Program-made: the position numbers and the translations under genes
In this document: positions 3,068 to 55,024 of the stretch, piece after piece
Layout: every line of letters begins with the position of its first letter
Position numbering within the stretch: the first letter of the stretch is position 1
Notes under the pieces: model-generated
Told to the model about the DNA's origin: nothing
The model's input: only the letters and a program-made list of their open reading frames with translations
The model's database searches: none
DNA from: Macrostomum lignano
Taxonomy: Eukaryota
Assembly (NCBI GenBank): GCA_002269645.1
Contig: NIVC01001811.1
Span: forward strand, 62,001-126,000
DNA: 64,000 nucleotides
Reading direction: 5' to 3'

Positions 3068-5983
3068 ATGGACGTCATGGCCATCACGAAGAAGATCTCG
3101 GACCTAAACGGTCGCCTTGGCAACATGGTTGCACTGTCCGAGCCCAGAGAGAACCACTACATTGCCTACAAGTGCAAAGGTTCAGCCGAGTTCAACGCCA
3201 TCGATTCGGCAATAAGCAGTTTCGGCTCTGTGCTGGTCTCAGCCACTTACCCCGGCCTGTGCAGACTGGAGCTGCTGGAGCCAACTGCCACGGTGAATCT
3301 CACCTGCCGGGCCCGCCTTCAGGCTGTGGATTATCATGGCCGGATTCGAACTGGGGGCGGCGATCCGGTCACAGCCAGGCTGGAGACTCCGCTAGGCGAA
3401 CTGTTGGAAACTGCCGTTGAAGATGCGGAGGACGGCACCTATTTGGTGCGCTTTGTGCCGCTGTGTGCTGGCAGGCACCGGCTGACTGTCCGAGTGTTTG
3501 ACAGGCCTGTCCGGGGCTGTCCGGTGGAGCTGGACGTGGCCGGAAGGCACCGACCCGTTGCCAAGGTTACCGCTGGCTCGTCCGGCGCCTGTCAGATTGA
3601 AAGGCTGCAGGTGATTTATGGTTTGCTTGCTGACTTTGGGGGGGGTCATTTGACCTTCTCTCCAGACTGATTTTGGGAGAGGTCATTTGACCCTATGTTC
3701 AGACTGCTTTTGGGAGGTCATTGACCCTCTCTTCAGACTGATTTTATGAGGTCATTGACCCTCTCTTCAGACTGATTTTATGAGGTCATTGACCCTCCCC
3801 TCAGACTGATTTTTGAAGGGGGTCGTTTGACCCTCCCCTCAGACTGATTTTTGAAGGGGGTCGTTTGACCCTCCCTTAAGACTCCTTTTAGGAAGGGGTC
3901 AATTGACTTCCTCTAGTGTCTGTTAAAGCAGGGGTTATTTAACTGCTTTTATCGCCTATTAAGGTAAGGGGTCGTTTGACTGCCTTCAGTGCCTGCTATG
4001 GGGGTCATTTGACTCCGAAATTAAGCCTATGGTAGCAGTATTCATTGGGATAACTTTCTACTCATAACATGCTGTCTCATCGCCAGGCCCCGTACGCCGT
4101 GGCCTCGAGCCTGGCCGGGACCGAGGTGTTCGTGTCGGACACTGGCAATTGTCGGATAGCCGTTCTGGACTCGAATCTGCAGTGGCTGGGCGAGATCGGC
4201 AAAGACACAGCGGCCAGCGGCCGAGCGGCTACAGGGCTGGCTGTAGATGCAGCGGGGAGGCTGTGGGTGAGTTGGGTGGGCCATCGGCTGCGTGGAGGAG
4301 TTTTATGGGAGATTATAAAATATTAGATTGTAGAACATGTCGTGTAGCATTAGGCTGTGTAATACTATACTGAGGCGGGACTCAGGCATGGCTCAGGCAG
4401 GGCTCAGTTGGGACTCAGGCAGGACTCAGGCAGGGCTCAGGTGGGACTCAGGCAGGACTCAGACAGGACTCAGGTAGGACTCAGGTAGGACTCAGGCAGG
4501 ACTCAGGCATGGCTCAGGCAGGGCTCAGGTAGGACTCAGGTAGGACTCAGGCAGGACTCAGGCATGGCTCAGGCAGGGCTCAGGTGGGACTCAGGCAGGA
4601 CTCAGGCATGGCTCAGGCAGGACTCAGGCATGGCTCAGGCAGGGCTCAGGCAGGACTCAGGTAGGACTCAGGCAGGACTCAGGCATGGCTCAGGCATGGC
4701 TCAGGCAGGACTCAGGCATGGCTCAGGCAGGACTCAGGCATGGCTCAGGTGGGACTTAGGCAGGACTCAGGCATGGCTCAGGCAGGACTCAGGCAGGACT
4801 CAGGCATGGCTCAGGCAGGACTCAGGCAGGACTCAGGCATGGCTCAGGCAGGACTCAGGCACAGCCTCGAACCGCCCCAAACACCGAAGGTGGCCAACTG
4901 GAAGGAGCGGCAGGTATTCGAACTCGACCCCAGCCAAGATCGAATTGTGTCAACTATCAGCGGCGACTTTCTCGCCGAGCCCGGCCTAGTAGCCGTCGGC
5001 AGCCGAGGCGAGGTTGTTGTGGCCGATGCCGGCTCCGGCCAGGTGCACATCGTTGACCCCGGCAGCGGCTGCCGCGTAGCCAGCATCGGCAACTCCTCCT
5101 CCTCCTCGAGGCGGCTGAAATCGTTGACCGCCCTGACTGCTGATTGGTCGAACTGCGCAGACGGCGGCTGCAGTCTGGTGTACGGACTCGCCAGCGGGGA
5201 GGTCACCGTCTGCGGCGGCGGCGACTGGGCGAAAATCGGCGACCTGCGATGCCAGTCTTCGAATGGCGCAGTGGCCGGATTGGCTGTTGACGAGTTCGGC
5301 CGCTTGTTGGTGGCGAGACAGCCGGGAGTTGTTCAGGTATTTATGGAGAGGGGGTCACAGGGGGGTCGAGGGGGTCAATTGACCCCTCACTGTCAATAGG
5401 AACGTAAGATGCGTTCAAGTGAAAATCGCTTGACTCAGATAGGGGTCAAGGGGTCGTGCAACTCCATAAGAAATACAAGAGGGGTCAAATGACCCCCTTC
5501 TTAAATATAAAAGGGGTCAAATGACCTTTCCGAAATACACTAGAGAAGGTTATATGATTTACTTCTGGATGTTCGAGGGTCAAGTGACTCCCCGATCCGA
5601 ATTCAATACGGGGGTCAAGTGACTCCCCGATCCGAATTCAATACGGAGGTCAAGTGACTACCCCATCGAATTTCAATACGGGGGTCAAATGACTCCCCCA
5701 TCCGAATTCAATACGGGGGGTCAAGCGACTCCCCCATCTGAATTCAATACGAGGTCATGTGACTCCCTATTCGAGCGAACATTACTTTTAATAAAGATTT
5801 GCTAATCTCGATCCCCTTGCCTCGCAGGTGTACACCCGACCGCTTGGCGAGTTCATCTGCGACATTCTGCCGGAGGAGCAGGAGCGCCTGCGGCGTCCCG
5901 GAGGCGTCTGCTGCCTGCCCGACGGCTGGCTTGTGGTGGCCGACACTGCTGGCAATACGGTGAAGAAATTTCGCTACACTTGA
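3068..5983 (+). CDS. 3' part of a filamin-repeat + NHL beta-propeller protein (TRIM-NHL family, TRIM2/3/71-like architecture); exons 3068-3610, 4087-4266, 4890-5336, 5828-5983
   Basis: All four exons are flanked by AG/GT and join in phase 0. Filamin Ig repeat: DYHGRIRTGGGDPVTARL...DAEDGTYLVRFVP..GRHRLTVRV. NHL repeats: VFVSDTGNCRI, GLAVDAAGRLW|VANW, VVADAGSGQVH, GLAVDEFGRLLV, LVVADTAGNTVKKFRYT*. No RING/B-box exons are seen in the window, so they are presumably upstream. Confidence 0.85.
3640..4012. repeat. intronic array of GGTCA-N1-2-TGACC palindromes
   Basis: Recurrent gaggtcattgaccc / ggtcatttgacc units at ~35-40 bp spacing. Confidence 0.8.
4373..4862. repeat. ~10-bp minisatellite (CTCAGGCAGG/CTCAGGCATGG)n in intron
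   Basis: Directly visible. Confidence 0.93.
5355..5770. repeat. intronic array of GGGGTCA-NN-TGACCCC palindromes, ending in a ~35-bp tandem unit
   Basis: ggggtcaaatgacccc and ggggtcaagtgactcccc...gaattcaatacg repeats. Confidence 0.8.
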
Positions 5984-6680: not shown

Positions 6681-7934
6681 AGGGGGGATTTTGTTTATTT
6701 TTATTTAGTTGCCTCATCAAGTGAGATTTCTCGAAACTGCGTAAAACCTCACTGAGAAATGTGCACTAAATGTACTCAATTAATTTGAATTGCTTGATTG
6801 AGATGTTTAGTTATGCATAAAAAAGTTTTTAATAGTTTTTCACGGTTCGAATTGCACCTTTGAAAACTAGTTGTTTTTCTGTTCTGTTGAGAACATAGTC
6901 AGCTAGAATTAATATTGATTGATTGTGATTTATGCTCAATTCTTGTAGTTGTTGCCATAAATAATTTGTGCAAACAGAGCAGATTTTTTACCTTTAATCT
7001 TTCGTTTAATTTTTTTCATTTTTTGTTATCATTTGCAATCCGGCACTTTTTAAATTTAGCGCCTTTTTAAGTTAGTCCTTTACCTTAACAGCCTACTGAC
7101 TTGCTGATATCAGTAGGCAACTAAGCGCACCAACGTTATTATTTGCTCATTCCGCCTTCATTTAGTAGATTATTAAATTTGTTTTTTTGTTTATTCTTTC
7201 GCCAGTGCAAAGCCAGGTAAATAAACTGTAAAAACTGCTTAAACCACCTTTCTTTATCCGCTGAGGAGCAGGACAGGCTGGAATTTTTATTAAAGAAAAC
7301 AAGTTTGATAAAATAAATGCACAAAATTGTCTGCGCCTGTGCACCCGCTTAGTTAAACAAATTATAATTTGGGTGTTGCTGTTGAATTTTAAGTTATTTA
7401 CTCGACATATCGGTAGGGTATTGTTGGAACTGAACTGAATTTGGGGCAGGACTGCTTTGCCCCCTGCAAAGCCCACAACAGTCACCTTTCCACTTCTCTC
7501 TCCCTTCAATTTTTCAGCAATGCAGTGCGGTTATCTTCTCTTATCTTGCACGGGAGTCAGTTGCGGTGATTACGTAATCTGTCGCGCTTGCTTCGTAACA
7601 TATATGGGATAGGTTAGCAGGTGAGCCAGGCTGCCTGATATACACTACGATAGCGTATATTGGTATTAATAACTTTACTAAATATAATACTGCAAAGTAT
7701 AAATCTTTAATCTGTAGTTCTGTAAGCCTTTTAAAGATTATAGCTTAGAAGTATATTATTTTAGTATAGAAATTACCAAATTTGGTATGTTCAAAAGTTG
7801 AAGCAAAATTTAAGAATGAACAACCAATGAATTATATGTTATATATTTATAATTTTGTAGTGTAACACGCTAATAGAACACATTGGCGGGCTAAAAAAGA
7901 TGTTGAGCAAAATAACAATGGTACATGATGCAAT

Positions 7935-8632
7935 TGTTGTGTCTCGGCCTAATGGCCGCTGGACGGGTCAAGGTTCGGGCCCTCCCCGCCTGAGACACCC
8001 CTGTCCCAGCCCTCACCCCGGCTATTCCTACCCTGTCTCGCTCGGTTCGGCGAGAGTTCGCCTGACCGAACACCCTGGGATCGGCGAGAGTTCACCGTTC
8101 CCAGGTCCCTGCAGATCCCGGCCCCACGCGGCAACCCAGAAGAACGAAAGCTCGAGCTCACCTCCTCTTGATATATCGAGTTAATCACGAAGCGTTTATT
8201 GGCCCGAAGCAGTTATTGGCACGCGAAGGCAGAGGTACGCCGTGAACGCAAAAACAGTAAGAACGAAGCGGACACCAATAGAGAGCAAACGTGGAGCGCA
8301 GCCCGCTCAGGCTAGCATTTAAATAATACACAAAAAAGGGGGAGGGGTGGGGCAGAATGGAGACGGCGAGCCAAACCCTGGGGCCCAGCCGGCTTATCAG
8401 CCAGCCAGCCAATACGAGCAGCCCCAGGGTGAGGCGGGCAACGAGGGAGGGGGGGGCACCCAGATTGGACAGAGATTGGGCCGGGGGCTGGGTGCAAAGG
8501 GCTAGGCCAGGGTTGAGACTTACGCCTCTCACAAACCCTGGCCCGGGCGCGAGACGGGGGACGGGGCGGGGTGGCATGAAAACTGAAAACAAAAGTACGA
8601 GTACATACACACTGGAAGGGCGCAGCCCAACA
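7935..8632 (-). repeat. 3' LTR (698 bp)
   Basis: Near-identical to 15872-16572. TG...CA ends. Carries AATAAA on the minus strand. Confidence 0.97.
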
Positions 8633-8644
8633 TCCTCCCCCTCC
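8633..8644 (-). other. polypurine tract GGAGGGGGAGGA
   Basis: Purine run abutting the 3' LTR on the element strand. Confidence 0.9.
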
Positions 8645-8872
8645 ACGAAAAAGAAGAGGAGAAAGGGGATGTCAAGCAAAAAGCAACGCATGAACAAGCA
8701 AGTCTGAAAAAAAGTTAATTCAAAAAACGACGGCCGAAAAATAACAGAAAAACTTTGACGCGACGCGTGGATATCGCCGGCATTACAAAAAACAAAAACG
8801 AAAAAATGAAAACGGGACACAAACTATTGCGTACGCAAAAATTGAAAACGGGCTTAAGAACGCAATTCTACT

Positions 8873-10549
8873 CTACAATCGGCCAAAAAATCTACTACAG
8901 TTGGTCGCAAACAGTCGAGTCCAGTACCTGCGATCACATTCACTGTCCGCTAGGGCTTCCGGCACGAACTTGATGGCTGTCGGGTCCTTGGGGTCTCCAC
9001 CAAACGGTGCGGCCGATGTCACTAGCAGGCGCTGCCGCGGGAGACGCTTAGCCCGTTGGACCGCTCGCGGGGATCCTCGGCACCGAGCGGACACCTCGAA
9101 GAAGACCCCGTGGCACTTGCTCACCAGCGCGGCCTCGACGGCCTCCGGCAAGTCCAGGTCCTCGGCCAGCATGACGCTCATCGTTTGAAACTCCGGCTGC
9201 CGGAGGAATCCTAGGGCGACCGCCCAGGCAGGTTCGCCGCCTTCAACTCGGAACAAAACCGGCAGGCCGAACTCCTTGGCAAGCAAGAACTGCTCCATCG
9301 CCGCCGTTAACTGGTCCTGGCGCTGCGACCTCTCAGCGTCCCAATTGAGCTCGACTTCGCCGACCGCCACGACACGCGGCCAGCTACCCGCTAGAAATCG
9401 TCGTACATCGTCTCGCAGCGATGGCCACCACGGTGCAGCACTGGCCTTCAGGCCCAGGGCGAACACGATCCGTCGGTCTTGCAGCAGTGGTCGGACAACG
9501 GGACATTCTAGACGCAGGCAGTACGGCGAGTTTACAGCCGCTAGACATCGACGCACGCCACGAAGGTCCTCGGGCTGAATCGACCGGCCCAGCCTCGTTA
9601 GGTATGCCTTTGCATCGACGAGACGCTTAGCCGAGCTGACCTTGCGCTGATTCGGGTCGTCACGGGGGGAGACCTCCTGGACCGTGTCGGCCGGTCGTAC
9701 TTGCTCGGGGTCGACACCCGTTAACTCTTCGGTCGCCAAGTCGCGCTGGGCCGTCAGCGGAGTCTGCGAAAGGTGCGGCCCGTCACTCCCCTCCTCCGGG
9801 CGCCGCGCGAGGCCAGGATCCACTAAGAGAGACAGACCCCGGAGCCTCCCCAACAAGGGACCCCCCAACTCACACAGCTCAAAACCCCGCACAGCCAACA
9901 ACACGCACTCAAACGCCGCCTGCAGCACCGAAGGCGGGACCCTCCGACACCTCCCGGAGCCACCACCAGAACCTCTCTTCCGCCCATACTGATTGCACAG
10001 AAACGACACAGACACTGCTAAGAATCTAGACAACTGCTCAGGCACACTCACACCAGCCCCATCAAGAAACCTCGCCACCTCCTGAACCACCAGGCAAGCT
10101 CCTTCACTATCCCCAGCCCTCAACCGCGCCAGCAGCGCACCCCTCAGCCGCCTACACTCAGCAAGCGCAGCCGGAGCCAATAACTCGGCTGGGATCTCCG
10201 CGTGAACTGGAGCTTCCCCTGCGGCGCTTCCCTTAAGACTAGCCAAAGCTAACCTGACCTGCTCGGGCAACTCAACGTCAGGGGGAGGATTGAAAAAGTA
10301 GGCGTACTTTAACACCCCTTGACACGCTGCCTCTCCAACCCGATCGTATACTTCCCGAAACACTGGGTCAGATAAAACGCACATCGCCATCACGTCTCGC
10401 TGAGACTCCGGAGACTCTACCTCGGCAGGACAGACGCGGGGCCGCTTTGAGTACAGACGACTACACGCTGCCTCAATCTCCGCAGAGTTAGCAGTCCGAC
10501 CCACGCCTAACACGCCATACAAATCAGTCGGTGTCGTTGGCGACGACAT
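8873..10549 (-). CDS. retrotransposon ORF3 (558 aa): HPD-less DnaJ-like N-terminal domain + helical linker + TatD-like (probably inactive) C-terminal domain
   Basis: Uninterrupted ORF between IN and the PPT. J-like part: DLYGVLGV.R.A...EI..A..RL...VLSDP..R.VYDR.GE. TatD-like part: LVDAKAYL, VVAVGEVEL, Q...EQFLLAKEFGLPV, LPRQRLLVTSAAP, D..P.....V..ALA, TNCSRFF. By-eye motif alignment only. Confidence 0.75.
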   Translation of the reverse strand: MSSPTTPTDLYGVLGVGRTANSAEIEAACSRLYSKRPRVCPAEVESPESQRDVMAMCVLSDPVFREVYDRVGEAACQGVLKYAYFFNPPPDVELPEQVRLALASLKGSAAGEAPVHAEIPAELLAPAALAECRRLRGALLARLRAGDSEGACLVVQEVARFLDGAGVSVPEQLSRFLAVSVSFLCNQYGRKRGSGGGSGRCRRVPPSVLQAAFECVLLAVRGFELCELGGPLLGRLRGLSLLVDPGLARRPEEGSDGPHLSQTPLTAQRDLATEELTGVDPEQVRPADTVQEVSPRDDPNQRKVSSAKRLVDAKAYLTRLGRSIQPEDLRGVRRCLAAVNSPYCLRLECPVVRPLLQDRRIVFALGLKASAAPWWPSLRDDVRRFLAGSWPRVVAVGEVELNWDAERSQRQDQLTAAMEQFLLAKEFGLPVLFRVEGGEPAWAVALGFLRQPEFQTMSVMLAEDLDLPEAVEAALVSKCHGVFFEVSARCRGSPRAVQRAKRLPRQRLLVTSAAPFGGDPKDPTAIKFVPEALADSECDRRYWTRLFATNCSRFFGRL

Positions 10550-10886
10550 GGTCCTCCTGCAATGATGACATTTAAACCCAATCACTACCTATGCCTTGCG
10601 GACTAGCAACTGTGACCCTGACCTGACCCATCCTATGACATGTTTATTTTACAATACGATTGAGAACGCTTCTTGCCTAGCATACTTTGTAATTTTAATA
10701 CATTTAATGTTTTTTACGTGCTTTCCATGCGTTCCATTTTATGATTTTTTTGTGCTTTGGGGTTGTATCATTTTTTTCATTTTAGGTTATTTTAGGCTTT
10801 CTACCATAGACAACAGCGTGGAGGCATTAATACAAGTGCATATTAAAAATCAATTTATGACGACCGCCTTGTGAGCCCACTGCGAA

Positions 10887-13800
10887 TTAACGATACAATA
10901 CCGGATTCCCGTAATACGCTGGGGGCACACCCCGACGCTCGCGCAGTCTGCGCGGAGACACGGCTGGCGCCGCTGGAGCCACCGGTGCGCATGGCGCAAC
11001 TGGCGTTCCCGGCCCTACTATCCCATGCCGAGGCCCAACGGCAACTGGTGGCACCACATACGAGTAAAACTCCTCCTCCTCCTCAAGTTCCGGCTCTTTA
11101 GTCGCCGGCCCCGCGGGCTCCTGTCTGCACCCTGCCGGCTCAGGCGGATGCGCCGACCGGCGCTGCACTGCCGTATGCCTATTCATCAACCTGAACTGCT
11201 CAGGCCGCTCGGGTACTTTTCGCAAATTATTATAATGCACTATTTTGCTCTTTCCCCTATTGGCGTGCTTTACCCGGTAATTCAAATCGGATATCTTCTC
11301 TAACACCTTCGCCGGCCCCTTCCAATTGCAATGGAACTTGGCTGCCTCCCCTGCCTGCAGCGCAGGCGAGTATTCTAGGACGGCATCCCCAACTTCTATG
11401 GCCGGGCCTCGCACCCTTGAGTCGTACAGCACTTTCTGTTTCCTCTGGTACTGCTGCAGGTTGGTCCGCACCTGCGAATGAGCCTCAGCCAGACTATTAC
11501 CTAATGACTGAACATACGCCGGAGCACTGGCAGGAATGGACTCAGGCAAGGTTCCAATGTCCACTGGAAGCCGCATCTCCCTGGCGTACAGCATGTAGTA
11601 CGGGGTGTACCCCGTGCCTCTGTGAACGCTGCTACGGTACGCCATGAGAGACGGGTGGATCAGATCCTCCCAGTCTCCTTCGCCCACCGACTCACTCATC
11701 CTGCACTTGATCATTGACTTCAACGTCTTATTGAAACTCTCAGCCTGACCATCAGCCATCGGGTGATAGGAGGACGTTCTGCATTTCTTAACGGCAAGCA
11801 ACCGACACAACTGCTTCATCAAAGCCGACTCAAAATTGGTGCCCTTATCGGTGACTAGAAATTCAGGACAACCAAAGTGCGCAATCCAGTGATCAAAAAT
11901 CGCTCGCGCCACCGTCGGGGCTCGCTGATTGGACAAGGGCACCGCCACCGGCCACTTAGTAAAAGAATCCTGGATTGTCAGCACGAATCGATTGCCACCT
12001 CTGGACTTGGGCAACGGCCCGACAATGTCACTCATGATCCTCTGGAAAGCTCCTTCCGAGCAGATTGGCTGCAAAGGCGCCCGGTTGCTGCGCCAGGCTT
12101 CGCCTTCGCACAGTGGACACAGCTCCGGCAATACTCTTCCACGGAACGACTCAGCCCCGGCCACCAGTATCTCGCCTTCACTTTCTCTTGTGTCTTCCTA
12201 ACCCCAAGGTGCCCTCCTGCAACCCCATCATGAAGCTCACTGAGCACTTTCGGCAGCAAAGCCGGCGGCAGCAAGATCTTTTTCTGGCACCCACTCCCGG
12301 GACTCTGAAAATACAACAGATCAGACTCTACTCTTATCAGCTGCCGTTGTGCCCACAGCACACGCTCCTCCCACGACATCACTCTAGGCGCACTGGGGTT
12401 CGAACCCGGGTCCAGGGCATAGGAGCGGACAGCTGCAAGCTTCTTCTCGGCCACTTGCGCCTGCTGGACTTCCTTCAAAGACAGCCCACTGCCAAACACC
12501 GCGTTCACTACTGGCACATTCTCGCTAAACTGGCAGCTAGGGCAGCTCTCATGGCCAGCGTGTTTTCGGTACTTGCGAGACAGCGAATCAGCGTTGCCGT
12601 GCTCCTTGCCTGGCCTGTGAATGATCTCAAAGTCGAAGTTCTGGAGCGACTCAAGCCACTTGCGCACTGACCCTCTACGTCCTTCAGACTGGCTAGCCAC
12701 TGCAAAGCTTTGTGGTCTGAACGAACAGTGAACTTTCTACCTAACAAATAGTACCTATACTTTTTGACGAAGTGCACGACGGCAAGCAACTCTAACCTGG
12801 TGGTGCAATAATTTTTCTCCGCCGCATGAATCATCCTAGACCCGTAAGCGATCACCTTCTCACGGCCATCTGCTTGACGCTGTGACAGGACGGCTCCCAG
12901 CCCGACGCGCGAACTGGCGTCCGTGTCGAGGATGAACTCCCCGGCACCAGGCGAAAAATCCGGGAATGCCATCACATTCGGTGAACACAAAGCGTCTTTC
13001 AGCCTGCAAAACGAACTCTCCTCTTCACTACCCCACTCAAACTTCACTCCGTCTGCGGTTAACCTATACAGCGGCGCTGCAATCTCCGAAAACTGCGGGA
13101 TAAATGACTGATAGTAGGCGCACGTACCCAGGAATGCCTGCACCTTCTTGGCGCTACATGGCCTCGGCCAATTCTGGATCTCCTCGCACTTGCTCGGTCC
13201 GTTGCGATCCCCTCCTGAGAGACGATGTGGCCCAGAAACTTCACCCGCTCTGCGAGGAACACACACTTGGCGGGCTTCAGCTTGACATTGGCATCCCTCA
13301 GGCACTGGAAAACATGCTTCAATCGCTCGAGATGCTGACCCACCGACTTGGCGAACACGACTATATCGTCAAAGTACACCAGGCACTCCTTCCAGTTAAC
13401 CTCAGACAGGGCCATAGACATTAGCCTGGCGAACGTGGCGGGAGCATTGCGCAAGCCAAAACTCATGCACTTCCAGGCGAACTGACCCCTGTTGGGTACC
13501 ACGAACGCCGTTTTCAACTGGTCCTTCGGCTCAATCGGGCACTGATGATAGCCGGAGGCCAGATCCATCGTCGAGAAAACACAGTTCCCTCCTAGCGCAT
13601 CAAGCGTCTCGTCCATCCGCGGCGGTGGGTAAGGATCTGGCACTGTGACCTCGTTAAGGCGCCGATAGTCTAGACACAACCTCAAGCTACCGTCGGCCTT
13701 TTTAACCGGCACGATCGGGCTCGCCCACGGAGAGTAGCAGGGATAGATGCGATCCTGCTGCAACAACTCATCAACCTGCTTATCAATTTCCTCCTTCCAG

Positions 13801-14822
13801 CGCGGTGGAATCCTACGCGCGGGCTGACTTACTGGCTTGGCGTTGCCGGTGTCAATCTCATGCGCCATCAAGTGTGACTGTCCCAACTCCGAGCTATCCC
13901 TGGCAAAGACATCACGATTCCGAGCCATCAGGCGCTCAAACTCGTGCTTCTCATCGCCCGTCAGGCCACATCCTCCCCACTCCTTGACATCGCTGAGGGG
14001 GTTCCAGTCGTCTCGGACACTCTCCACCGAGTTCACCTGCCACCCAGCTGGCTGCTGGGCCGCCACTGGGGAGAACCAACCAATTCGGCTTCCCTTCCTT
14101 AATGACAGACTGCATCCTGACGTGTTCAACACCCTGACAGCCAAGCGACCGTCCCCGTCAGGCATCTGTACCGATCTGGCCACCATCTGCTCGTTACTCA
14201 CTCTCCTCTCAGACTCCACAATGCCTAGGAACTGAATCCCAGAGGGAACCCTTCTCTGCAACCTGACGTGCACCACCTTCTCTTGACCTGCATTGAACTG
14301 CTCAGGCTGACTCAGCACCAGACGGCAAAGACGCGGCTTATCTGCTGATAAGCGAAACGGATACACACAGGATGCAGTCTGCAAGCAATTCCTAGCAAAG
14401 TCAATCGCCATCCCGTGTCTCACGAAAAAGTCAGTGCCCAGAATACATGCCACAGCCAGTTCCTCGACCACAGCGAACTCGTGCAAAAACTCGGTGTCCC
14501 CAACAGAAAACTTCATCGTCACCATTCCATGTACAGCAATCGGTTCCCCATTGGCAGCGAAAACGGAAAAATTCGGCAAATTCGGCGATAAGTCAATGTC
14601 GGCTTTTCTAGACTTCAGGAAACGGTTGCTTAACAACGACACGGTGGCCCCGCTGTCCAGCAGACATGCAATCGGGGGCCCAAACCTAAACTGTGCATCC
14701 ACATAGCCCAGTCCCTGCCGACTCAGCACACTCTGGGACAAGGCCGCGGCCCCCGATGCACCCGGATTCACTGACGCTGGGGCCCGGACGGGTGCCCCGG
14801 CCGAGCCCCCAATCCGTTTCCC
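10887..14822 (-). CDS. pol: pol polyprotein (aspartic protease, RT, RNase H, integrase), read through three 1-nt frameshifts
   Basis: PR: LLDSGATVS. RT: PWASPIV, LDYRRLN, FGLRNAPATF, YFDD. RNase H: TDASS..LGAVL, TDH-like SDHKALQWL. IN: HHCC (ELHDG..GGHLG...CRSCVHC), DIVGPLP, VTDKG, YHPMADGQAESFN, WKGP. Breaks at ~13196, ~12667 and ~12093 are each repaired by adding one base. Confidence 0.93.
14758..14822 (-). promoter_or_regulatory. programmed -1 ribosomal frameshift signal: G GGA AAC slippery heptamer + H-type pseudoknot
   Basis: The heptamer (14816-14822) is in the gag frame and its -1 frame is pol (GKRIG). After a 6-nt spacer come stem 1 GGGGCUCGG/CCGGGCCCC and stem 2 GCACCCG/CGGGUGC. Confidence 0.85.
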
Positions 14823-15747
14823 GAACCCGACTGGTCCCACCGACGATCGCAGCGGTTGCGCATGTGCCCTGACTGGCCACACTCCCGGCAGACCACTGCA
14901 TTACGGCACCGAGCCGTAGTATGCCCTGTCTGCAGGCACCGACCACACTGCCTCTGCTGCTGACTCTGCTCAGGGGCTCGATGCTGCAAGCTCACTTTTG
15001 GCTGCTCAGACCTTGCTGTCGCCATCGGCGCAGTGGGCGCTGCAGCACTTGCTTTTAGCTGAGCCACTTCCGCTTTCAGAGCTGCTATCTCGGCGGCTGC
15101 CCTGGACTCCTGGCTGTTGCCAGCCGCTGCGGCCTGACCCCCACCATGTGCACAGCTCGCTTACCCTCAGGCTCCATCAGAGCCAACGATGCCCTCACTT
15201 GACGCACCCGCCTAATAGCGTCCTGGAGCGTCTCTGGCGCTTGCAGCAGCACGCTCTCCAGCACCCGGGCTGGCACCCGAATCCCCTTCAAAAACCTGTC
15301 TTTCACCAACTCTTCTCGCTGGGCCGCTGGCAGCATTGGGTACGATTTTCTCATAAGCTCCTTGAGCACGTCTGCATATTCTTCAATGGGCTCGCCATCT
15401 TTCTGATTCCTACTCTGGAACTCGGTCTTGTAATCTTGAGCAGTCCTATTCTCATCAAACCTAGCTTCTAGCTGCTCAACAAACTCATCATACGGCAAAT
15501 CATCGGCCAACTCAAGATTCGCAACAGCCTTAAAAGCAGTATTAAAGTCAAGCAGACTGAGCAGCGCCTGCTTGCGCTGATCCCCTAGAATATGAGCCGC
15601 CTCACAATACCCTGTGAATTGTTGCATCCAAAGGGCAAAGTCCTGTGTGGGCACGTACTTATTTGGCCTCGGCACCCGCTGTGCCACATTAAGTTCGTTT
15701 TGCAGACGCGCCGTCAGGGCGTCAATCAGATCGTCTAAATTGGCCAT
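14768..15747 (-). CDS. gag: gag with two CCHC zinc knuckles (1-nt frameshift at 15138-15142)
   Basis: Starts MANLDDLIDAL. Capsid-like region FQSRNQKDGEPIEEYA..L..L...YP...FLKG. Knuckles CGRCLQTGHTTARC and CRECGQSGHMRNRC. Adding one G to the G5 run joins the two ORF-track pieces. Confidence 0.9.
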
Positions 15748-15851
15748 GGCTACAAAAACACAGAGACAACCGAAGCAAACAACACACAAATAAACTAGGC
15801 AACACACACAACCCTAAACACACGGCAGGACAGCAGGGGAGAGGACCGCTG

Positions 15852-15869
15852 ATCCTGGTCACGGCACCA
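15852..15869 (-). other. primer-binding site complementary to tRNA-His 3' end (TGGTGCCGTGACCAGGAT)
   Basis: Lies 2 nt inside the 5' LTR boundary. Matches the ...ATCCTGGTCACGGCA-CCA end typical of invertebrate tRNA-His(GUG), from recall. Confidence 0.85.
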
Positions 15870-15871
15870 CT

Positions 15872-16572
15872 TGTTGTGTCTCGGCCTAATGGCCGCTGGA
15901 CGGGTCAAGGTTCGGGCCCTCCCCGCCTGAGACACCCCTGTCCCAGCCCTCACCCCGGCTATTCCTACCCTGTCTCGCTCGGTTCGGCGAGAGTTCGCCT
16001 GACCGAACACCCTGGGATCGGCGAGAGTTCACCGTTCCCAGGTCCCTGCAGATCCCGGCCCCACGCGGCAACCCAGAAGAACGAAAGCTCGAGCTCACCT
16101 CCTCTTGATATATCGAGTTAATCACGAAGCGTTTATTGGCCCGAAGCAGTTATTGGCACGCGAAGGCAGAGGTACGCCGGTGAACGCAAAAACAGTAAGA
16201 ACGAAGCGGACACCAATAGAGAGCAAACGTGGAGCGCAGCCCGCTCAGTGCTAGCATTTAAATAATACACAAAAAAGGGGGAGGGGTGGGGCAGAATGGA
16301 GACGGCGAGCCAAACCCTGGGGCCCAGCCGGCTTATCAGCCAGCCAGCCAATACGAGCAGCCCCAGGGTGAGGCGGGCAACGAGGGAGGGGGGGGGCACC
16401 CAGATTGGACAGAGATTGGGCCGGGGGCTGGGTGCAAAGGGCTAGGCCAGGGTTGAGACTTACGCCTCTCACAAACCCTGGCCCGGGCGCGAGACGGGGG
16501 ACGGGGCGGGGTGGCATGAAAACTGAAAACAAAAGTACGAGTACATACACACTGGAAGGGCGCAGCCCAACA
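15872..16572 (-). repeat. 5' LTR (701 bp)
   Basis: By eye it differs from the 3' LTR by only three 1-nt indels. Confidence 0.97.
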
Positions 16573-16677
16573 CAATATTGACTTCGATTTTGTGAAGAAA
16601 ACTTGATAAGTATTTTTTAATGAAACGAAACTTATATTTGCCTTGTGTTTATGAAAATTATGCATGAAATACAAAAA

Positions 16678-25425: not shown

Positions 25426-28400
25426 GCCTGCGTTGGCATCTGTGCCTATCAGACAAGCTGTGTGCAGGCCAGAAATGAAACTGAGAGAAAAAAAAATTCT
25501 TTTGCAGTTTTTACTTCTTTTTCATCAATTGCAAATAAAAAATGAAGTCCTTGCGGACGTGGATGTTCTGTGCGCATTGCGCAACAGAATTATTTAAGAA
25601 CGGGGAACAGGATTGCGAAATCCTCAACGTCTCAATGGCCTCATCTTTTGTCTTAGATTTCAATTTTGCTTCTAAATTTTCATACACAGTTTTTTATTAC
25701 GGGGGAAATTCGTTGACGCAAAAAAGTGGAGGAAAGAATGACAGAGAGGCTCTGATTGATTGATCAGTGTTGTTGCGACACACCTTGCCATGTCTGTTGA
25801 GCAATCAGCACCCCATGCTGTCTGTTTAATAACTGCGATAGAATTTCTCTCGAGTCTAGAAGCATTTCACAGTTTAATTAAACCTTTTAACGGTGGGCAA
25901 TTTTTTATTTAATCAATTTTTCCTGTTGCTTAAATAGACTTGGGTCCGCTATGCTGTTGCGTAATTGAATTGTAAAACGTGAAAAATCTATAGTTTGTTA
26001 AAGGTTTATTTTGAGTGAGTTGAGTGCTTAACATAGGAAAGGACAGAGGGGGAGAGCGGGAGGGAGAGGAGGAGAGAGCGGAAAGAAGAGAAGGGGAGAG
26101 CGGAAAGAAGAGAATGGGAGAGCGGAAAGAAGAGAAGGAGAGAGCGGAAAGAAGAGAAGGAGAGGGCGGAAAGAAGAGAAGGAGAGAGCGGAAAGAAGAC
26201 AAGAGAGAGCGGAAAGAAGAGAAGGACGGAGCGGAAAGAAGAGAAGGAGAGAGCGGAAAGAAGAGAAGGAGAGAGCGGAAAGAAGAGAAGAGAGAGCGGA
26301 AAGAAGAGAGGAGAGAGCGGAAAGAAGAGAGGAGAGAGCGAAAAGAAGAGAGGGAGAGAGCGGGCAGCGGTAACCCCTGCAGAACAGGTGCCTCAGCAGC
26401 ACGCACCTTCTTATCAGATCTCAGCGCAACCACTTGTAAACAGTTGCTTTAAAGAAGTTTGCAAAGCCACCCAACCATGGGCGCCTAGCGGTCTTACAAA
26501 CTTGAAGCTGGACACCCTGACTAACTTTTACGCAACACAATTGCTGATGAAGCTGACTCGAGGAGCCTGGATAGATTGGGGGGGGGGAAGACAGACCCCC
26601 CGCAGAATGACGTTTGAAAATTTTCAGTTCTGTCCTTCAGCCACTTGTAATCAGGCAATAAATCATTCAGTTTGCGCAATGCAGGTTGCCAAGCGACTGT
26701 GCTGTTGCGTCATCAGAATACTCTCTGGTTTCGACTTTCGACTTTCGCTGTAAACAGGGCAATGAGTGAAACAATTAATTTTATCGCACTTATTTTTAAT
26801 TATTTATATAACTATTTCCACCTGTCCAGATTAATTAGATCTTTTCAAACAGTTGCGGTTTTAAGACACCTGCAGCTTTTCAACTGCTATATTTCTAGCC
26901 CAAAATTTCCCGGAATGAACCGCGTATTGCATGGAAAACTTGCACTGCACACCTTGACCTTTGGGTTTGATAATTATCACATTGAATTTATCTACTCTCA
27001 GCTGTCTACTTATCTACCCTCAGTTGTCTACTTATCTACCCTCAGCTGTTTACTTATCTACCCTCAGTTGTCTATTTATCTACCCTCAGCTGTTTACTTA
27101 TCTACCCTCAGTTGTCTATTTATCTACCCTCAGTTGTCTACTTATCTACCCTCAGTTGTCTACTTATCTACCCTCAGCTGTTTACTTATCTACCCTCAGT
27201 TGTCTATTTATCTACCCTCAGTTGTCTACTTATCTACCCTCAGCTGTTTACTTATCTACCCTCAGTTGTCTACTTATCTACCCTCAGTTGTCTACTTATC
27301 TACCCTCAGCTGTTTACTTATCTACCCTCAGTTGTCTATTTATCTACCCTCAGTTGTCTATTTATCTACCCTCAGCTGTTTACTTATCTACCCTCAGTTG
27401 TCTATTTATCTACCCTCAGCTGTTTACTTATCTACCCTCAGTTGTCTATTTATCTACCCTCAGTTGTCTACTTATCTACCCTCAGTTGTCTACTTATCTA
27501 CCCTCAGTTGTCTATTTATCTACCCTCAGCTGTCTACTTATCTACCCTCAGTTGTCTATTTATCTACCCTCAGTTGTCTATTTATCTACCCTCAGCTGTC
27601 TACTTATCTACCCTCAGTTGTCTATTTATCTACCCTCAGCTGTCTACTTATCTACCCTCAGCTGTCTATTTATCTACCCTCAGCTGTCTACTTATCTACC
27701 CTAAATTGTCTACTTATCTACCCTCAGCTGTCTATGCATCCCCCGAATAGCTATCTACTCACACTGTCTAGAGCTCTTTCATACAACCTTCGAATGTCTT
27801 CTAGCTGACCTTCAGACTGAACTGCAGTCTGTTTTAACCGACAAACAATGTAAAAATGAATGACAAAAAATTCTCGAAAAAAGGCTGCCAGACCACCAAA
27901 AGGCTCGTAAAATTACAGGCCGAAGCGCGTCAAACCGAGTTCGTTTTTGGTTTTAGCAGTTTCAGCCGCCTCAGAATTTTTTTCCGAACAATTCGAATAC
28001 TGCTTCGAGTCGAGCTCGCTATTACGTAATCGAATGCTGGATACGAGAGACTCGGTATGAGACAGAAACAACAACGAAGAAATGAAGATTAAGTCTGGCA
28101 AGTGTCCGACCGCGCGAGAAGGGCCGCGGCTGCGCCAGGGACTACTATAGAAAGCAATCTTGATGCTGGACTGGAAACCCGAAAATTTAGAAAAAAAAGG
28201 TGGACTATTGCGCGCTTATATATCTTTCATAGCATTAGCTTGTGTCTGTGCGTGTGTCATGGTGTCTGTCTTTATGTCTGCTAGTGTCAGTCTTAGTGTT
28301 TCCTATAGTGTCTGTCCTAGTGCCTGTCTTTATGTCTGCTAGTGTCAGTCTTAGTGTTTCCTATAGTGTCTGTCCCAGTGTCTGTCTTTATGTCTGCTAG

Positions 28401-31400
28401 TGTCAGTCTTAGTGTTTCCTATAGTGTCTGTCCCAGTGTCTGTCTCATTGTCTTTATCAGTGTCTGTCTCAGTGTCTGTCTCTGTGTCTGTCTCAGTGTC
28501 TGTCTCAGTGTCTGTCTCAGTGTCTGTCTCAGTGTCTGTCTCAGTGTCTGTCTTAGTGTCTGTCTCAGTGTCTGTCTCATTGTCTGTCTCATTGTCTTTA
28601 TCAGTGTCTCTCTCAGTGTCTGTCTCAGTGTCTGTCTCAGTGTCTGTCCTAGTGTCTGTCCTAGTGTCTGTCCTAGTGTCTGTCCTAGTGTCTGTCCTAG
28701 TGTCTGTCCTAGTGTCTGTCTCAGTGTCTGTCTCAGTGTCTGCCCTAGTGTCTGTCCTAGTGTCTGTCCTAGTGTCTGTCCTAGTGTCTATCCTAGTGTC
28801 TGTCCTAGTGTCTGTCCTAGTGTCTGTCTCAGTGTCTGTCCCAGTGTCTGTCCTAGTGTCTGTCCTAGTGTCTGTCCTAGTGTCTGTCCTAGTGTCTGTC
28901 CTAGTGTCTGTCCTAGTGTCTGTCCTAGTGTCTGTCCTAGTGTCTGTCTCAGTGTCTGTCTCAGTGTCTGCCCTAGTGTCTGTCCTAGTGTCTGTCCTAG
29001 TGTCTGTCCTAGTGTCTGTCCTAGTGTCTGTCCTAGTGTCTGTCCTAGTGTCTGTCCTAGTGTCTGTCCTAGTGTGTGTCCTAGTGTGTGTCCTAGTGTC
29101 TGTCCTAGTGTCTGTCCTAGTGTCTGTCCTAGTGTGTGTCCTAGTGTGTGTCCTAGTGTGTGTCCTAGTGTCTGTCCTAGTGTGTGTCCTAGTGTCTGTC
29201 CTAGTGTCTGTCCTAGTGTCTGCAGTATCTGTCCTGTCCTAGTGTCTGTCCTAGTGTCTGTCCTAGTGTCTGTCCTAGTGTCTGTCCTAGTGTCTGCAGT
29301 ATCTGTCCTAGTGTCTGTCCTAGTGTCTGTCCTAGTGTCTGTCCTAGTGTCTGCAGTATCTGTCCTGTCCTAGTGTCTGTCCTAGTGTCTGTCCTAGTGT
29401 CTGTCCTAGTGTCTGTCCTAGTGTCTGTCCTAGTGTGTGTCCTAGTGTGTGTCCTAGTGTGTGTCCTAGTGTCTGTCCTAGTGTGTGTCCTAGTGTGTGT
29501 CCTAGTGTCTGTCCTAGTGTCTGCAGTATCTGTCCTGTCCTAGTGTCTGTCCTAGTGTCTGTCCTAGTGCCTGTCCTAGTGTCTGTCCTAGTGTCTGTCC
29601 TAGTGTCTGTCCTAGTGTCTGTCCTAGTGTCTGTCCTAGTGTCTGTCCTAGTGTCTGTCCTAGTGTCTGTCCTAGTGTCTGTCCTAGTGTCTGTCCTAGT
29701 GTCTATCCTAGTGTCTGTCCTAGTGTCTGTCCTAGTGTCTGTCCTAGTGTCTGTCCTAGTGTCTGTCCTAGTGTCTGTCCTAGTGTCTGTCTCAGTGTCT
29801 GTCTCAGTGTCTGCCCTAGTGTCTGTCCTAGTGTCTGTCCTAGTGTCTGCAGTATCTGTCCTGTCCTAGTGTCTGTCCTAGTGTCTATCCTAGTGTCTGT
29901 CCTAGTGTGTGTCCTAGTGTGTGTCCTAGTGTGTGTCCTAGTGTCTGTCCTAGTGTCTGTCCTAGTGTCTGTCCTAGTGTCTGCAGTATCTGTCCTGTCC
30001 TAGTGTCTGTCCTAGTGTCTGTCCTAGTGCCTGTCCTATTGTCTGTCCTAGTGTCTGTCCTAGTGTCTGTCCTAGTGTCTGTCCTAGTGTCTGTCCTAGT
30101 GTCTATCCTAGTGTCTGTCCTAGTGTCTGTCCTAGTGTCTGTCCTAATGTCTGTCCTAGTGTCTGTCCTAGTGTCTGTCCTAGTGTCTGTCTCAGTGTCT
30201 GTCTCAGTGTCTGCCCTAGTGTCTGTCCTAGTGTCTGTCCTAGTGTCTGTCCTAGTGTCTGTCCTAGTGTCTGTCCTAATGTCTGTCCTAGTGTCTGTCT
30301 CAGTGTCTGCCTGCGTTGGCATCTGTGCCTATCAGACAAGCTGTGTGCAGGCCAGAAATGAAACTGAGAGAAAAAAAAATTCTTTTGCAGTTTTTACTTC
30401 TTTTTCATCAATTGCAAATAAAAAATGAAGTCCTTGCGGACGTGGATGTTCTGTGCGCATTGCGCAACAGAATTATTTAAGAACGGGGAACAGGATTGCG
30501 AAATCCTCAACGTCTCAATGGCCTCATCTTTTGTCTTAGATTTCAATTTTGCTTCTAAATTTTCATACACAGTTTTTTATTACGGGGGAAATTCGTTGAC
30601 GCAAAAAAGTGGAGGAAAGAATGACAGAGAGGCTCTGATTGATTGATCAGTGTTGTTGCGACACACCTTGCCATGCCTGTTGAGCAATCAGCACCCCATG
30701 CTGTCTGTTTAATAACTGCGATAGAATTTCTCTCGAGTCTAGAAGCATTTCACAGTTTAATTACGAGCGTAAATCTTTTAACGTTGGGCAATTTTTTTTA
30801 ATCAATTTTTCCTGTTGCTTAAATAGACTTGGGTCCGCTGTGCTGTTGCGTCATTGAATTGTAAAACGTGAAAAATCTATAGTTTGTTAAAGGTTTATTT
30901 TGAGTGAGTTGAGTGCTTAACATAGGAAAGGACAGAGGGGGAGAGCGGGAGGGAGAGGAGGAGAGAGCGGAAAGAAGAGAAGGGGAGAGCGGAAAGAAGA
31001 GAAGGGGAGAGCGGAAAGAAGAGAAGGAGAGAGCGGAAAGAAGAGAAGGAGAGGGCGGAAAGAAGAGAAGGAGAGAGCGGAAAGAAGACAAGAGAGAGCG
31101 GAAAGAAGAGAAGGACGGAGCGGAAAGAAGAGAAGGAGAGAGCGGAAAGAAGAGAAGAGAGAGCGGAAAGAAGAGAGGAGAGAGCGGAAAGAAGAGAGGA
31201 GAGAGCGAAAAGAAGAGAGGGAGAGAGCGGGCAGCGGTAACCCCTGCAGAACAGGTGCCTCAGCAGCACGCACCTTCTTATCAGATCTCAGCGCAACCAC
31301 TTGTAAACAGTTGCTTTAAAGAAGTTTGCAAAGCCACCCAACCATGGGCGCCTAGCGGTCTTACAAACTTGAAGCTGGACACCCTGACTAACTTTTACGC

Positions 31401-54845: not shown

Positions 54846-55007
54846 ACATTTTAACAATGAATAAGGCTAACATATCGTATTTTATTACTTGTACATTTTT
54901 GAGTTTCAACAAATAAAAGTCGAATACATGTGAGCTTGTATTTCTAATAAATATATTTTGACTATTGCCTTTTGAGTAGGCCTGTTACCATTTGACTGTT
55001 GTCATTT
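54771..55007 (+). repeat. ~235-bp direct repeat flanking the Penelope-like element (second copy 57232-57464), starting with (CT)n
   Basis: The two copies are identical apart from the microsatellite portion and one substitution (ctgttgtc/ctattgtc). Confidence 0.92.
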
Positions 55008-55024
55008 CATCTGTCGTCTTCAGA

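What the first reader, a model, noticed from the sequence alone, without database searches (positions are those of the whole stretch)
8873..10549. Gypsy retrotransposon carries a J-domain/TatD fusion ORF in the env position
Seen: between integrase and the PPT, on the element strand, lies an uninterrupted 558-codon ORF. It has no signal peptide, TM segment or furin-site/fusion-peptide pattern, so it is not an env. The N-terminus (10331-10525) aligns by eye to a DnaJ J-domain. The last ~250 aa (8876-9625) align over the full length of a TatD TIM-barrel nuclease, from the LVDAKAYL start to the TNCSRFF end. Established: extra ORFs in LTR elements are usually env, and bdelloid LTR elements are known to capture DEDDy 3'-exonucleases and GDSL esterases. 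I do not recall a TatD or J-TatD fusion in any retroelement. Inference: this is a captured and fused cargo gene maintained by the element, possibly a new accessory/anti-defence module.
Basis: partly seen in the sequence, partly recalled or inferred. Interest (0 to 1): 0.95.

Follow-up and report, generated by a model that had tools for sequence, protein, structure and literature searches.

The report
Flatworm retrotransposon's J–TatD-like third gene
A young Gypsy-type retrotransposon of the flatworm Macrostomum lignano carries, where retroviruses carry env, a conserved third gene made of a chaperone-type J domain and a TatD nuclease fold; in this family both parts have lost their catalytic signatures, and no such accessory gene turned up in the papers I could search.

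Summary
Window 7935-16572 (minus strand) is a complete Ty3/Gypsy element with near-identical LTRs, a 4-bp target duplication, PBS and PPT. Between integrase and the PPT lies an unbroken 558-codon ORF (10549-8873). Its N-terminus is J-domain-derived and its last ~250 residues are TatD-derived. Single-sequence Pfam scores fall below the curated cut-offs. The call rests on an exhaustive phmmer search, two-sequence profiles against PDB, an AlphaFold model with Foldseek, and UniProt's own naming of sister copies.

The host is Macrostomum lignano, not a bdelloid. Three M. lignano gene models carry nearly identical ORF3 copies. Two relatives in unidentified sequencing runs extend the gene across the element lineage. 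One links an integrase (42% identical) directly to an ORF3 opening with an intact J domain. The other holds a 51%-identical TatD-like half with a coding pattern of divergence (dN/dS about 0.27).

Here HPD reads RPR, and six of the seven TatD catalytic and metal-site columns compared are replaced. So it is more likely a non-catalytic accessory protein than a nuclease or co-chaperone. A canonical donor in the 5' LTR and an acceptor 7 nt before the ATG fit env-like subgenomic splicing. This is a new variant of the known "extra ORF3" theme; its function is inferred only.

The parts
7935..16572 (-). Complete Ty3/Gypsy LTR retrotransposon (8638 bp): LTR-PBS-gag-pol-spacer-ORF3-PPT-LTR
   Evidence: LTR alignment and motif coordinates; Pfam domains in the order gag, PR, RT, RNase H, IN
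15872..16572 (-). 5' LTR (701 nt), TG..CA ends. Holds a TATA-like box (16264-16257), AATAAA (16137-16132) and a candidate splice donor (exon ends 16099, GT at 16098-16097).
   Evidence: There is no ATG in the 158 nt between the TATA-like box and the donor.
7935..8632 (-). 3' LTR (698 nt). Differs from the 5' LTR only by three one-base indels in homopolymer runs.
16573..16576 (.). Target-site duplication (4 bp, ATTG on the element strand), upstream copy. The partner copy is at 7931-7934.
   Evidence: Read from the alignment of both LTR borders
15851..15869 (-). Primer-binding site starting TGG, 2 nt after the 5' LTR
14771..15813 (-). gag (capsid-like domain and a weak Zn knuckle). Broken as assembled: one frameshift.
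   Evidence: Retrotrans_gag hit; weak zf-CCHC hit in another frame; relative L004 has both in one ORF
10887..14900 (-). pol (PR-RT-RNase H-IN). Broken as assembled: three frameshifts.
   Evidence: Pfam hits spread over four overlapping ORFs in different frames
10557..10886 (-). A+T-rich spacer after the pol stop. It ends in a pyrimidine-rich stretch and an AG acceptor (10558-10557), 7 nt before the ORF3 ATG.
   Evidence: The junction reproduced by gene model P0004 joins base 16099 to base 10556.
8873..10549 (-). ORF3, 558 codons plus stop, unbroken
10304..10525 (-). J-derived domain (aa 9-82). RPR stands in place of the HPD motif.
9635..10303 (-). Middle region (aa 83-305). Predicted helical at low confidence, with no homologue outside the family.
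9764..10051 (-). In-frame, open 288-nt stretch with canonical intron ends. Two public gene models skip it. Candidate retained or alternative intron.
   Evidence: Its codon-position GC pattern matches the rest of ORF3.
8876..9634 (-). TatD-derived TIM-barrel domain (aa 306-558). Six of the seven catalytic and metal-site columns compared are replaced.
8645..8872 (-). T-rich untranslated stretch after ORF3
   Evidence: L001 has a similarly T-rich stretch after its ORF.
8633..8644 (-). Polypurine tract abutting the 3' LTR

Best explanation
ORF3 is a real, lineage-conserved third gene of a young Ty3/Gypsy retrotransposon family of the flatworm Macrostomum lignano. It occupies the env position but encodes a soluble protein: an N-terminal J-derived domain, a helical middle part and a C-terminal TatD-derived TIM barrel. 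It is most likely expressed the way retroviral env is. A splice would join a donor in the 5' LTR leader to an acceptor 7 nt before the ORF3 ATG, making that ATG the first in the message. In this family both domains have lost their chemistry. HPD, which J domains need to activate Hsp70, reads RPR. The two histidines of the N-terminal H-x-H, two further histidines and the acidic pair of TatD enzymes are all replaced. The protein therefore most likely acts without catalysis, as a binding or scaffold accessory factor. The nuclease-fold half may hold nucleic-acid ends or a host partner, and the J-derived half may serve as an interaction module. Shown: the anatomy, the homology, the motif losses, several copies, and conservation in diverged relatives. 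Inferred: the splicing, the absence of activity, and the binding role.
For: Element anatomy and ORF3 position. J and TatD homology; UniProt itself names two sister models 'J domain-containing protein'. Motif loss: alignment columns; the 51%-identical relative P0003 shows the same loss at the catalytic columns it covers, apart from the aspartate after the retained glutamate, which it keeps. Several copies: P0001, P0002 and P0004 match ORF3 at 96-100% over the aligned parts. P0002 also holds a 3' LTR piece plus flanks absent from the window. P0004 holds 5' LTR sequence joined to the ORF3 start. Lineage conservation: L014 has an integrase 42% identical, followed about 100 nt later by an ORF opening with a J domain that keeps HPD (60.2 bits), with an acceptor 1 nt before its ATG. 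One run, SRR31628403, holds both an integrase 64% identical and a TatD-like half 51% identical. Selection: codon-position identity to L001 is 0.61/0.68/0.39, dN 0.49, dS 1.84, ratio 0.27. Base composition: ORF3 GC3 0.66 against pol 0.59-0.65, while the rest of the window outside the element has 0.47 GC. Splice model: canonical donor and acceptor, no ATG in the leader, and the P0004 junction is reproduced exactly.
Against: No transcript or protein data were available, and I could not find out whether the public gene models rest on RNA evidence. Pfam scores of the window protein alone are below the curated cut-offs. The structure model used an alignment containing true TatD proteins, so the Foldseek result is partly circular. 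The dN/dS rests on one pair, 163 codons and a near-saturated dS. L001 carries one frameshift, and neither L001 nor L014 is physically shown to hold both halves. The window copy's own gag and pol carry frameshifts, so this copy as assembled is not autonomous. Loss of both motifs is also what neutral decay would produce.
Confidence: 0.6

Rival explanations
1. ORF3 is a working enzyme pair: an active TatD 3'-5' nuclease tethered to a functional J domain that recruits and activates Hsp70 (the reading implied by the first reader).
For: Both folds are recognisable. One glutamate of the TatD site is kept. The relative L014 has an intact HPD, so the ancestral gene probably did engage Hsp70.
Against: In the window copy and in all three sister models HPD reads RPR. 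The H-x-H pair, two further histidines and the acidic pair of TatD are replaced, and P0003 shares those losses where it overlaps.
Confidence: 0.07
2. ORF3 is a neutral passenger: a host (or foreign) gene fragment once picked up by the element, now decaying, and open only because the family amplified very recently from one master copy.
For: Both catalytic signatures are gone. The M. lignano copies are almost identical, so they say nothing about selection. L001 has a frameshift. Few homologues exist anywhere.
Against: The reading frame and fold residues persist at 51% identity, with third positions far more diverged than first and second. A J-domain ORF3 sits behind integrase in a relative at only 42% integrase identity. 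An acceptor is placed just before the ATG in both lineages. An open stretch of 571 codons exceeds every one of 2000 shuffles.
Confidence: 0.2
3. ORF3 is expressed not by cis-splicing from the LTR but by spliced-leader trans-splicing onto the acceptor before its ATG, as for downstream genes of polycistronic messages in this flatworm. This is a rival for the expression step only.
For: M. lignano trans-splices 28,273 transcripts, and almost 7% of assembled transcripts are precursors encoding two or more proteins (PMC5730564). The acceptor is strong and lies 7 nt before the ATG.
Against: A canonical donor exists in the LTR leader, and one public model (P0004) joins it to this acceptor.
Confidence: 0.25
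4. ORF3 is an ordinary host gene and its place inside the element is an assembly chimera or a coincidence of nested insertions.
For: The assembly shows homopolymer indels, and the genome is highly repetitive and redundant (PMC5730564).
Against: ORF3 lies between integrase and the PPT inside one LTR pair with a target duplication. Its composition matches pol, not the rest of the window outside the element. Sister models contain LTR pieces next to ORF3. L014 independently links integrase to a J-domain ORF.
Confidence: 0.03

Closest known systems
Bdelloid rotifer Vesta/Juno LTR retrotransposons with non-env enzymatic ORF3 (DEDDy exonuclease, GDSL esterase; Rodriguez et al. 2017, PMC5408684)
   Same: Gypsy-type elements with a third ORF after pol that lacks transmembrane or coiled-coil env features. 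It derives from a cellular hydrolase fold, in one case a 3'-5' exonuclease. ORF3s are said there to be typically expressed from spliced messages.
   Different: No sequence relation: ORF3 here gives no DEDDy or GDSL hit. The fold is a TatD TIM barrel fused to a J domain. The bdelloid ORFs keep their invariant catalytic residues (with DEDD changed to DEED), whereas here they are lost. The host phylum also differs.
env of retroviruses and errantiviruses (position and expression)
   Same: Located between integrase and the PPT. Candidate subgenomic splice from a leader donor to an acceptor just before the start codon.
   Different: No signal peptide, membrane span or fusion features. Flatworm env-carrying elements described so far have a herpesvirus gB-type env in the order gag-env-pol (PMC13524379).
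TatD family (E. coli TatD/YcfH/YjjV, S. aureus TatD, human TATDN1/TATDN3)
   Same: The whole TIM-barrel domain aligns. The best PDB matches by profile and by fold are all TatD family.
   Different: Six of the seven catalytic and metal-site columns compared are replaced. Pfam score is below the cut-off. The domain is fused to a J domain and carried by a retroelement.
J-domain proteins, including J-like domains without HPD (for example DNAJB13, the best PDB hit)
   Same: The helix I-IV sequence pattern is recognisable. The relative L014 passes the Pfam cut-off with HPD intact.
   Different: HPD reads RPR in the M. lignano family. No G/F or client-binding domains follow; a TatD fold does instead.
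J domain of polyomavirus T antigens (from my own knowledge, not tested here)
   Same: A mobile or viral genome encoding its own J domain to engage host Hsp70. This may describe the ancestral state seen in L014.
   Different: No sequence relation was tested or claimed. It is a different kind of element, and the window's copy lacks HPD.

Membership tests
Ty3/Gypsy (Metaviridae) LTR retrotransposon | Paired LTRs with TG..CA ends flanked by a short target-site duplication | tested here: met
   LTRs of 701 and 698 nt, differing by three one-base indels; 4-bp duplication
Ty3/Gypsy (Metaviridae) LTR retrotransposon | PBS after the 5' LTR and PPT before the 3' LTR | tested here: met
Ty3/Gypsy (Metaviridae) LTR retrotransposon | pol domain order PR-RT-RNase H-IN, with integrase last | tested here: met
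   Pfam hits in that order along the minus strand. The clade within the superfamily was not determined.
J-domain protein (DnaJ/Hsp40 class) | Match to the J-domain profile | tested here: inconclusive
   Window protein alone: 18.3 bits against a cut-off of 27.8. With relative L014 as a two-sequence profile: 55 PDB J domains, best E 5.8e-15. L014 alone: 60.2 bits.
J-domain protein (DnaJ/Hsp40 class) | HPD tripeptide between helices II and III | tested here: not met
   RPR at the aligned positions in the window and in P0001, P0002 and P0004. HPD is present in L014.
TatD family nuclease | TatD-type TIM-barrel fold over the whole domain | tested here: met
   Model pLDDT 79.8, pTM 0.82. Foldseek top 15 all TatD family, TM 0.70-0.80. 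Caveat: the input alignment held true TatD proteins.
TatD family nuclease | Score above the curated Pfam/NCBIfam cut-off | tested here: not met
   PF01026 23.3 bits against 27; TIGR00010 20.2 bits against 206
TatD family nuclease | Conserved metal-binding and catalytic residues (N-terminal H-x-H, Glu, two His, acidic pair) | tested here: not met
   Only the glutamate (E398) is kept. The other columns, nearly invariant in the bona fide TatD rows, read K, Y, R, a non-histidine, T and A.
Retroviral/errantiviral env | Signal peptide, membrane anchor and fusion machinery | tested here: not met
   Maximum 19-residue hydropathy 1.49; N-terminus not hydrophobic; no env family in Pfam
Bdelloid-type enzymatic ORF3 (DEDDy or GDSL) | Homology to DEDDy exonuclease or GDSL/SGNH hydrolase | tested here: not met
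   No such Pfam hit at E up to 0.01

The most novel reading that the evidence does not exclude
A lineage of flatworm Gypsy elements has carried its own J-domain/TatD-fold gene since before its families diverged to 42% integrase identity. It would be the first retroelement-encoded Hsp70 co-chaperone, coupled to a nuclease fold. In M. lignano it has become a double pseudo-enzyme that may bind, and perhaps blunt, a host nuclease, a chaperone, or reverse-transcription intermediates.
Probability: 0.25. Interest if true: 0.8.

Novelty: new variant of a known kind. Interest (0 to 1): 0.62.

Why it matters
Extra genes in LTR retrotransposons show how retrovirus-like elements gain new functions. Apart from env, only a few kinds are described. 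A J-domain/TatD-fold gene kept across diverged families would add a new cargo type. It would also point to chaperone recruitment and nucleic-acid-end handling as needs of these elements. And it would give an example of an element-borne gene that stays under constraint after losing both catalytic signatures. M. lignano is a transgenic laboratory model whose LTR elements are already under study (PMC12801592), so expression and distribution can be checked directly.

Tried and rejected
- The word-indexed protein search gave nothing for the whole ORF3 or for its TatD half. It even missed P0003, so those blanks say little.
- Exact look-ups of ORF3, P0002 and P0004 found no contig. Sister copies could therefore be studied only as proteins, and no within-species dN/dS was possible.
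- Single-sequence AlphaFold of the whole ORF3 was useless (pLDDT 39). The J-derived domain and the middle region have no usable model.
- A global alignment of full ORF3 with domain homologues misplaced the TatD N-termini. It was not used for modelling.
- Scans of viral, prokaryotic-genome and metagenome contigs returned only distant ordinary TatD genes.
- The PADLOC and PHROGs libraries gave no hit.
- A link to heat-shock control was rejected: no heat-shock element lies in the LTRs.
- The paper behind the UniProt gene models is not held, so whether RNA supports them is unknown.
- The organism of runs SRR31628394 and SRR31628403 could not be identified.
- Origin of the TatD part (host TATDN-like or prokaryotic): the nearest full-length matches look prokaryotic in type, but composition may drive that. 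No phylogeny was built.
- The joined-exon products of the two splice models were not built or searched. Exons were handled apart, by reference.
Full report
**1. What is there**

On the minus strand, an ORF of 558 codons runs from the ATG at 10549 to the stop at 8873. The open stretch is 571 codons. In 2000 shuffles of the integrase-to-LTR interval, the longest open stretch was 282 codons.

The ORF lies inside a complete LTR element, window 7935-16572.
- The LTRs are 701 and 698 nt with TG..CA ends. They differ only by three one-base indels in homopolymer runs.
- A 4-bp target-site duplication flanks the element.
- A PBS starting TGG lies 2 nt after the 5' LTR, and a polypurine tract abuts the 3' LTR.
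- Pfam places a gag capsid domain, aspartic protease, RT, RNase H, the integrase zinc domain, the integrase core and an integrase C-terminal domain in Gypsy order upstream of ORF3.

As assembled, gag carries one frameshift and pol three. A further frame change lies at the gag-pol border and may be the natural one. ORF3 has no break. The only LTR differences are homopolymer indels, so I cannot tell real decay from long-read assembly error.

**2. Host and copies**

An exhaustive phmmer search of 1.84 billion representative proteins found 13 hits. Three are UniProt gene models of Macrostomum lignano: a 3511-aa model, a 1229-aa 'J domain-containing protein' and a 173-aa 'J domain-containing protein'.
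- They match ORF3 at 96-100% over the aligned parts.
- The 1229-aa model also contains a piece of the 3' LTR, plus flanks that are absent from the window.
- The 173-aa model consists of 5' LTR sequence joined to the ORF3 start.

So ORF3 exists in several element copies at other loci.

The window's many tandem arrays fit what is published for this genome. LTR elements make up 21% of it and simple or tandem repeats 15% (PMC5730564). At least 137 LTR families are known in M. lignano, mostly of the Mag, Gmr1/Osvaldo and CsRN1 clades. The paper that catalogues them mentions no J or TatD ORF (PMC12801592).

**3. The two domains**

*J part (aa 9-82).*
- Pfam DnaJ scores 18.3 bits, below the cut-off.
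- The best PDB hit is DNAJB13, E 6e-5. NCBIfam DnaJ models reach E 1e-5.
- J proteins appear at E about 5e-4 in the 1.8-billion-protein library.
- A two-sequence profile with relative L014 hits 55 PDB chains, all J-domain proteins, best E 5.8e-15.

*TatD part (about aa 306-558).*
- Pfam TatD_DNase scores 23.3 bits, below the cut-off.
- The exhaustive search found bona fide TatD proteins at E 8.9e-9 to 8.5e-4. Their own Pfam E-values are 1e-27 to 1e-80. One aligns over ORF3 aa 256-556.
- A two-sequence profile of ORF3 plus P0003 hits only TatD-family chains in PDB, best E 3.6e-5.
- An AlphaFold model built on alignment A2 has pLDDT 79.8 and pTM 0.82.
- The Foldseek top 15 PDB entries are all TatD family, with TM 0.70-0.80. 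This is partly circular, because A2 contains true TatD proteins.

Among predicted viral structures, only one giant-virus protein shares the fold at E below 1e-3. The middle region (aa 83-305) has no homologue and only a low-confidence helical prediction. There is no membrane span or signal-like N-terminus.

**4. Both chemistries are gone in this family**

I compared the columns that are nearly invariant in the bona fide TatD rows of alignment A2.
- ORF3 keeps one glutamate (E398).
- It has K and Y for the two histidines of the N-terminal H-x-H, and N for the aspartate after that glutamate.
- It has R for the next histidine, a non-histidine for the following one, and T and A for the acidic pair.
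- P0003, 51% identical, shares the replaced histidine and lacks the acidic pair. These losses therefore predate the split of the two.

In the J part, the positions aligned with HPD read RPR. The same holds in all three sister models. From established knowledge of J domains and of amidohydrolase-fold nucleases, neither Hsp70 activation nor metal-dependent hydrolysis is expected. This is an inference, not an assay.

**5. The gene is older than this family**

A search with the window's integrase core led to two Logan contigs.
- **L014** (run SRR31628394) ends a Gypsy pol whose integrase is 42% identical to the window's. About 100 nt later, on the same strand, an ORF opens with a J domain scoring 60.2 bits, with HPD intact. 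A pyrimidine tract and an AG lie 1 nt before its ATG. Its 162 visible residues align with ORF3 aa 10-172 (23% identity, E 9e-6 pairwise). The contig then ends.
- **L002** (run SRR31628403) holds an integrase 64% identical, followed by an A+T-rich spacer like the window's.
- **L001**, from that same run, encodes the TatD-like half at 46-51% identity in two frames (one frameshift), followed by a T-rich stretch as in the window.

L001 and L002 are not physically linked, and the organisms of both runs are unknown.

For the 163 aligned codons of the longer L001 segment, nucleotide identity by codon position is 0.61/0.68/0.39. dN is 0.49, dS 1.84 (near saturation) and dN/dS 0.27. The integrase gives 0.73/0.79/0.37 by codon position.

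ORF3's GC3 (0.66) equals that of pol (0.59-0.65). The rest of the window outside the element has 0.47 GC.

Together these results argue for long residence in the element lineage under purifying selection, with ORF3 evolving faster than integrase.

**6. Expression model (inferred)**

The 5' LTR has a TATA-like box, an AATAAA and then a canonical donor, with the exon ending at 16099. No ATG lies in the 158 nt between the box and the donor. A canonical acceptor ends at 10557, 7 nt before the ORF3 ATG. Joining the two reproduces exactly the junction peptide of the 173-aa UniProt model. This is the layout of an env-type subgenomic message.

Spliced-leader trans-splicing onto the same acceptor is a live alternative in this species (PMC5730564).

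Two UniProt models also skip an in-frame, open stretch of 288 nt (10051-9764) that has canonical intron ends. Its codon-position GC pattern looks coding. It may be a retained or alternative intron, or a predictor artefact.

I did not build or search the joined-exon products; exons were handled by reference, apart. I could not learn whether RNA evidence underlies the models.

**7. Comparison and novelty**

The closest known parallel is the bdelloid Vesta/Juno ORF3, which encodes a DEDDy exonuclease or a GDSL esterase (PMC5408684).
- Same idea: a hydrolase-fold ORF3 expressed from a spliced message.
- Different: the folds are unrelated, the host phylum differs, and the bdelloid ORFs keep their invariant catalytic residues (with DEDD changed to DEED).

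Flatworm env-bearing elements described so far carry a gB-type env in gag-env-pol order (PMC13524379).

Full-text searches found no paper linking TatD or a J domain to an LTR retrotransposon ORF. I rate this a new variant of a known kind.

Noticed in passing
L014:2165-2650 (+), Logan run SRR31628394: A related Gypsy element (integrase 42% identical) carries, about 100 nt after integrase, an ORF opening with a full J domain with HPD intact. A splice acceptor lies 1 nt before its ATG. The contig ends after 162 codons, so its C-terminal half is unseen.
   Followed up: partly
L013:9532-14011 (+), ENA ERZ26859043: A more distant Gypsy element (integrase 38% identical) has four same-strand ORFs (145, 235, 470 and 286 aa) after integrase. 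None gives a convincing Pfam family; the last shows only weak, sub-threshold matches, mostly to coiled-coil models. This is another unexplored post-pol coding region.
   Followed up: partly
L012:6886-11257 (+), ENA ERZ26858995: An element whose integrase lies before RT/RNase H (Gmr1-like order), with a SCAN-type gag. It is among the distant relatives of the window's integrase.
   Followed up: no
window 3068-5399 (+): ORFs with a Filamin repeat (E 1.9e-10) and a weak NHL repeat. They look like exons of a TRIM-NHL-type host gene just beyond the element's 3' side.
   Followed up: no
window 35964-44668: An 8.7-kb array of about 265 copies of a 33-nt unit with strong strand bias. It produces spurious ORFs of nearly 3000 codons.
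   Followed up: no
window 26036-30309 and 30925-33995: Two blocks carry the same three tandem-repeat units (22, 22 and 12 nt) in the same order, which suggests a local segmental duplication of satellite arrays.
   Followed up: no
window 54992-55933 (+): A weak RT hit (RVT_1, E 1e-4), probably a fragment of another retroelement.
   Followed up: no
window 7935-8632 against 15872-16572: The two LTRs differ only by three one-base indels in homopolymer runs. That pattern suggests long-read assembly error, which bears on how to read the frameshifts in gag and pol.
   Followed up: partly
P0007 (ENA, 192 aa): A TatD-family protein from an unrelated source that also lacks several ligand residues, so ligand-poor TatD relatives occur elsewhere too.
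   Followed up: no
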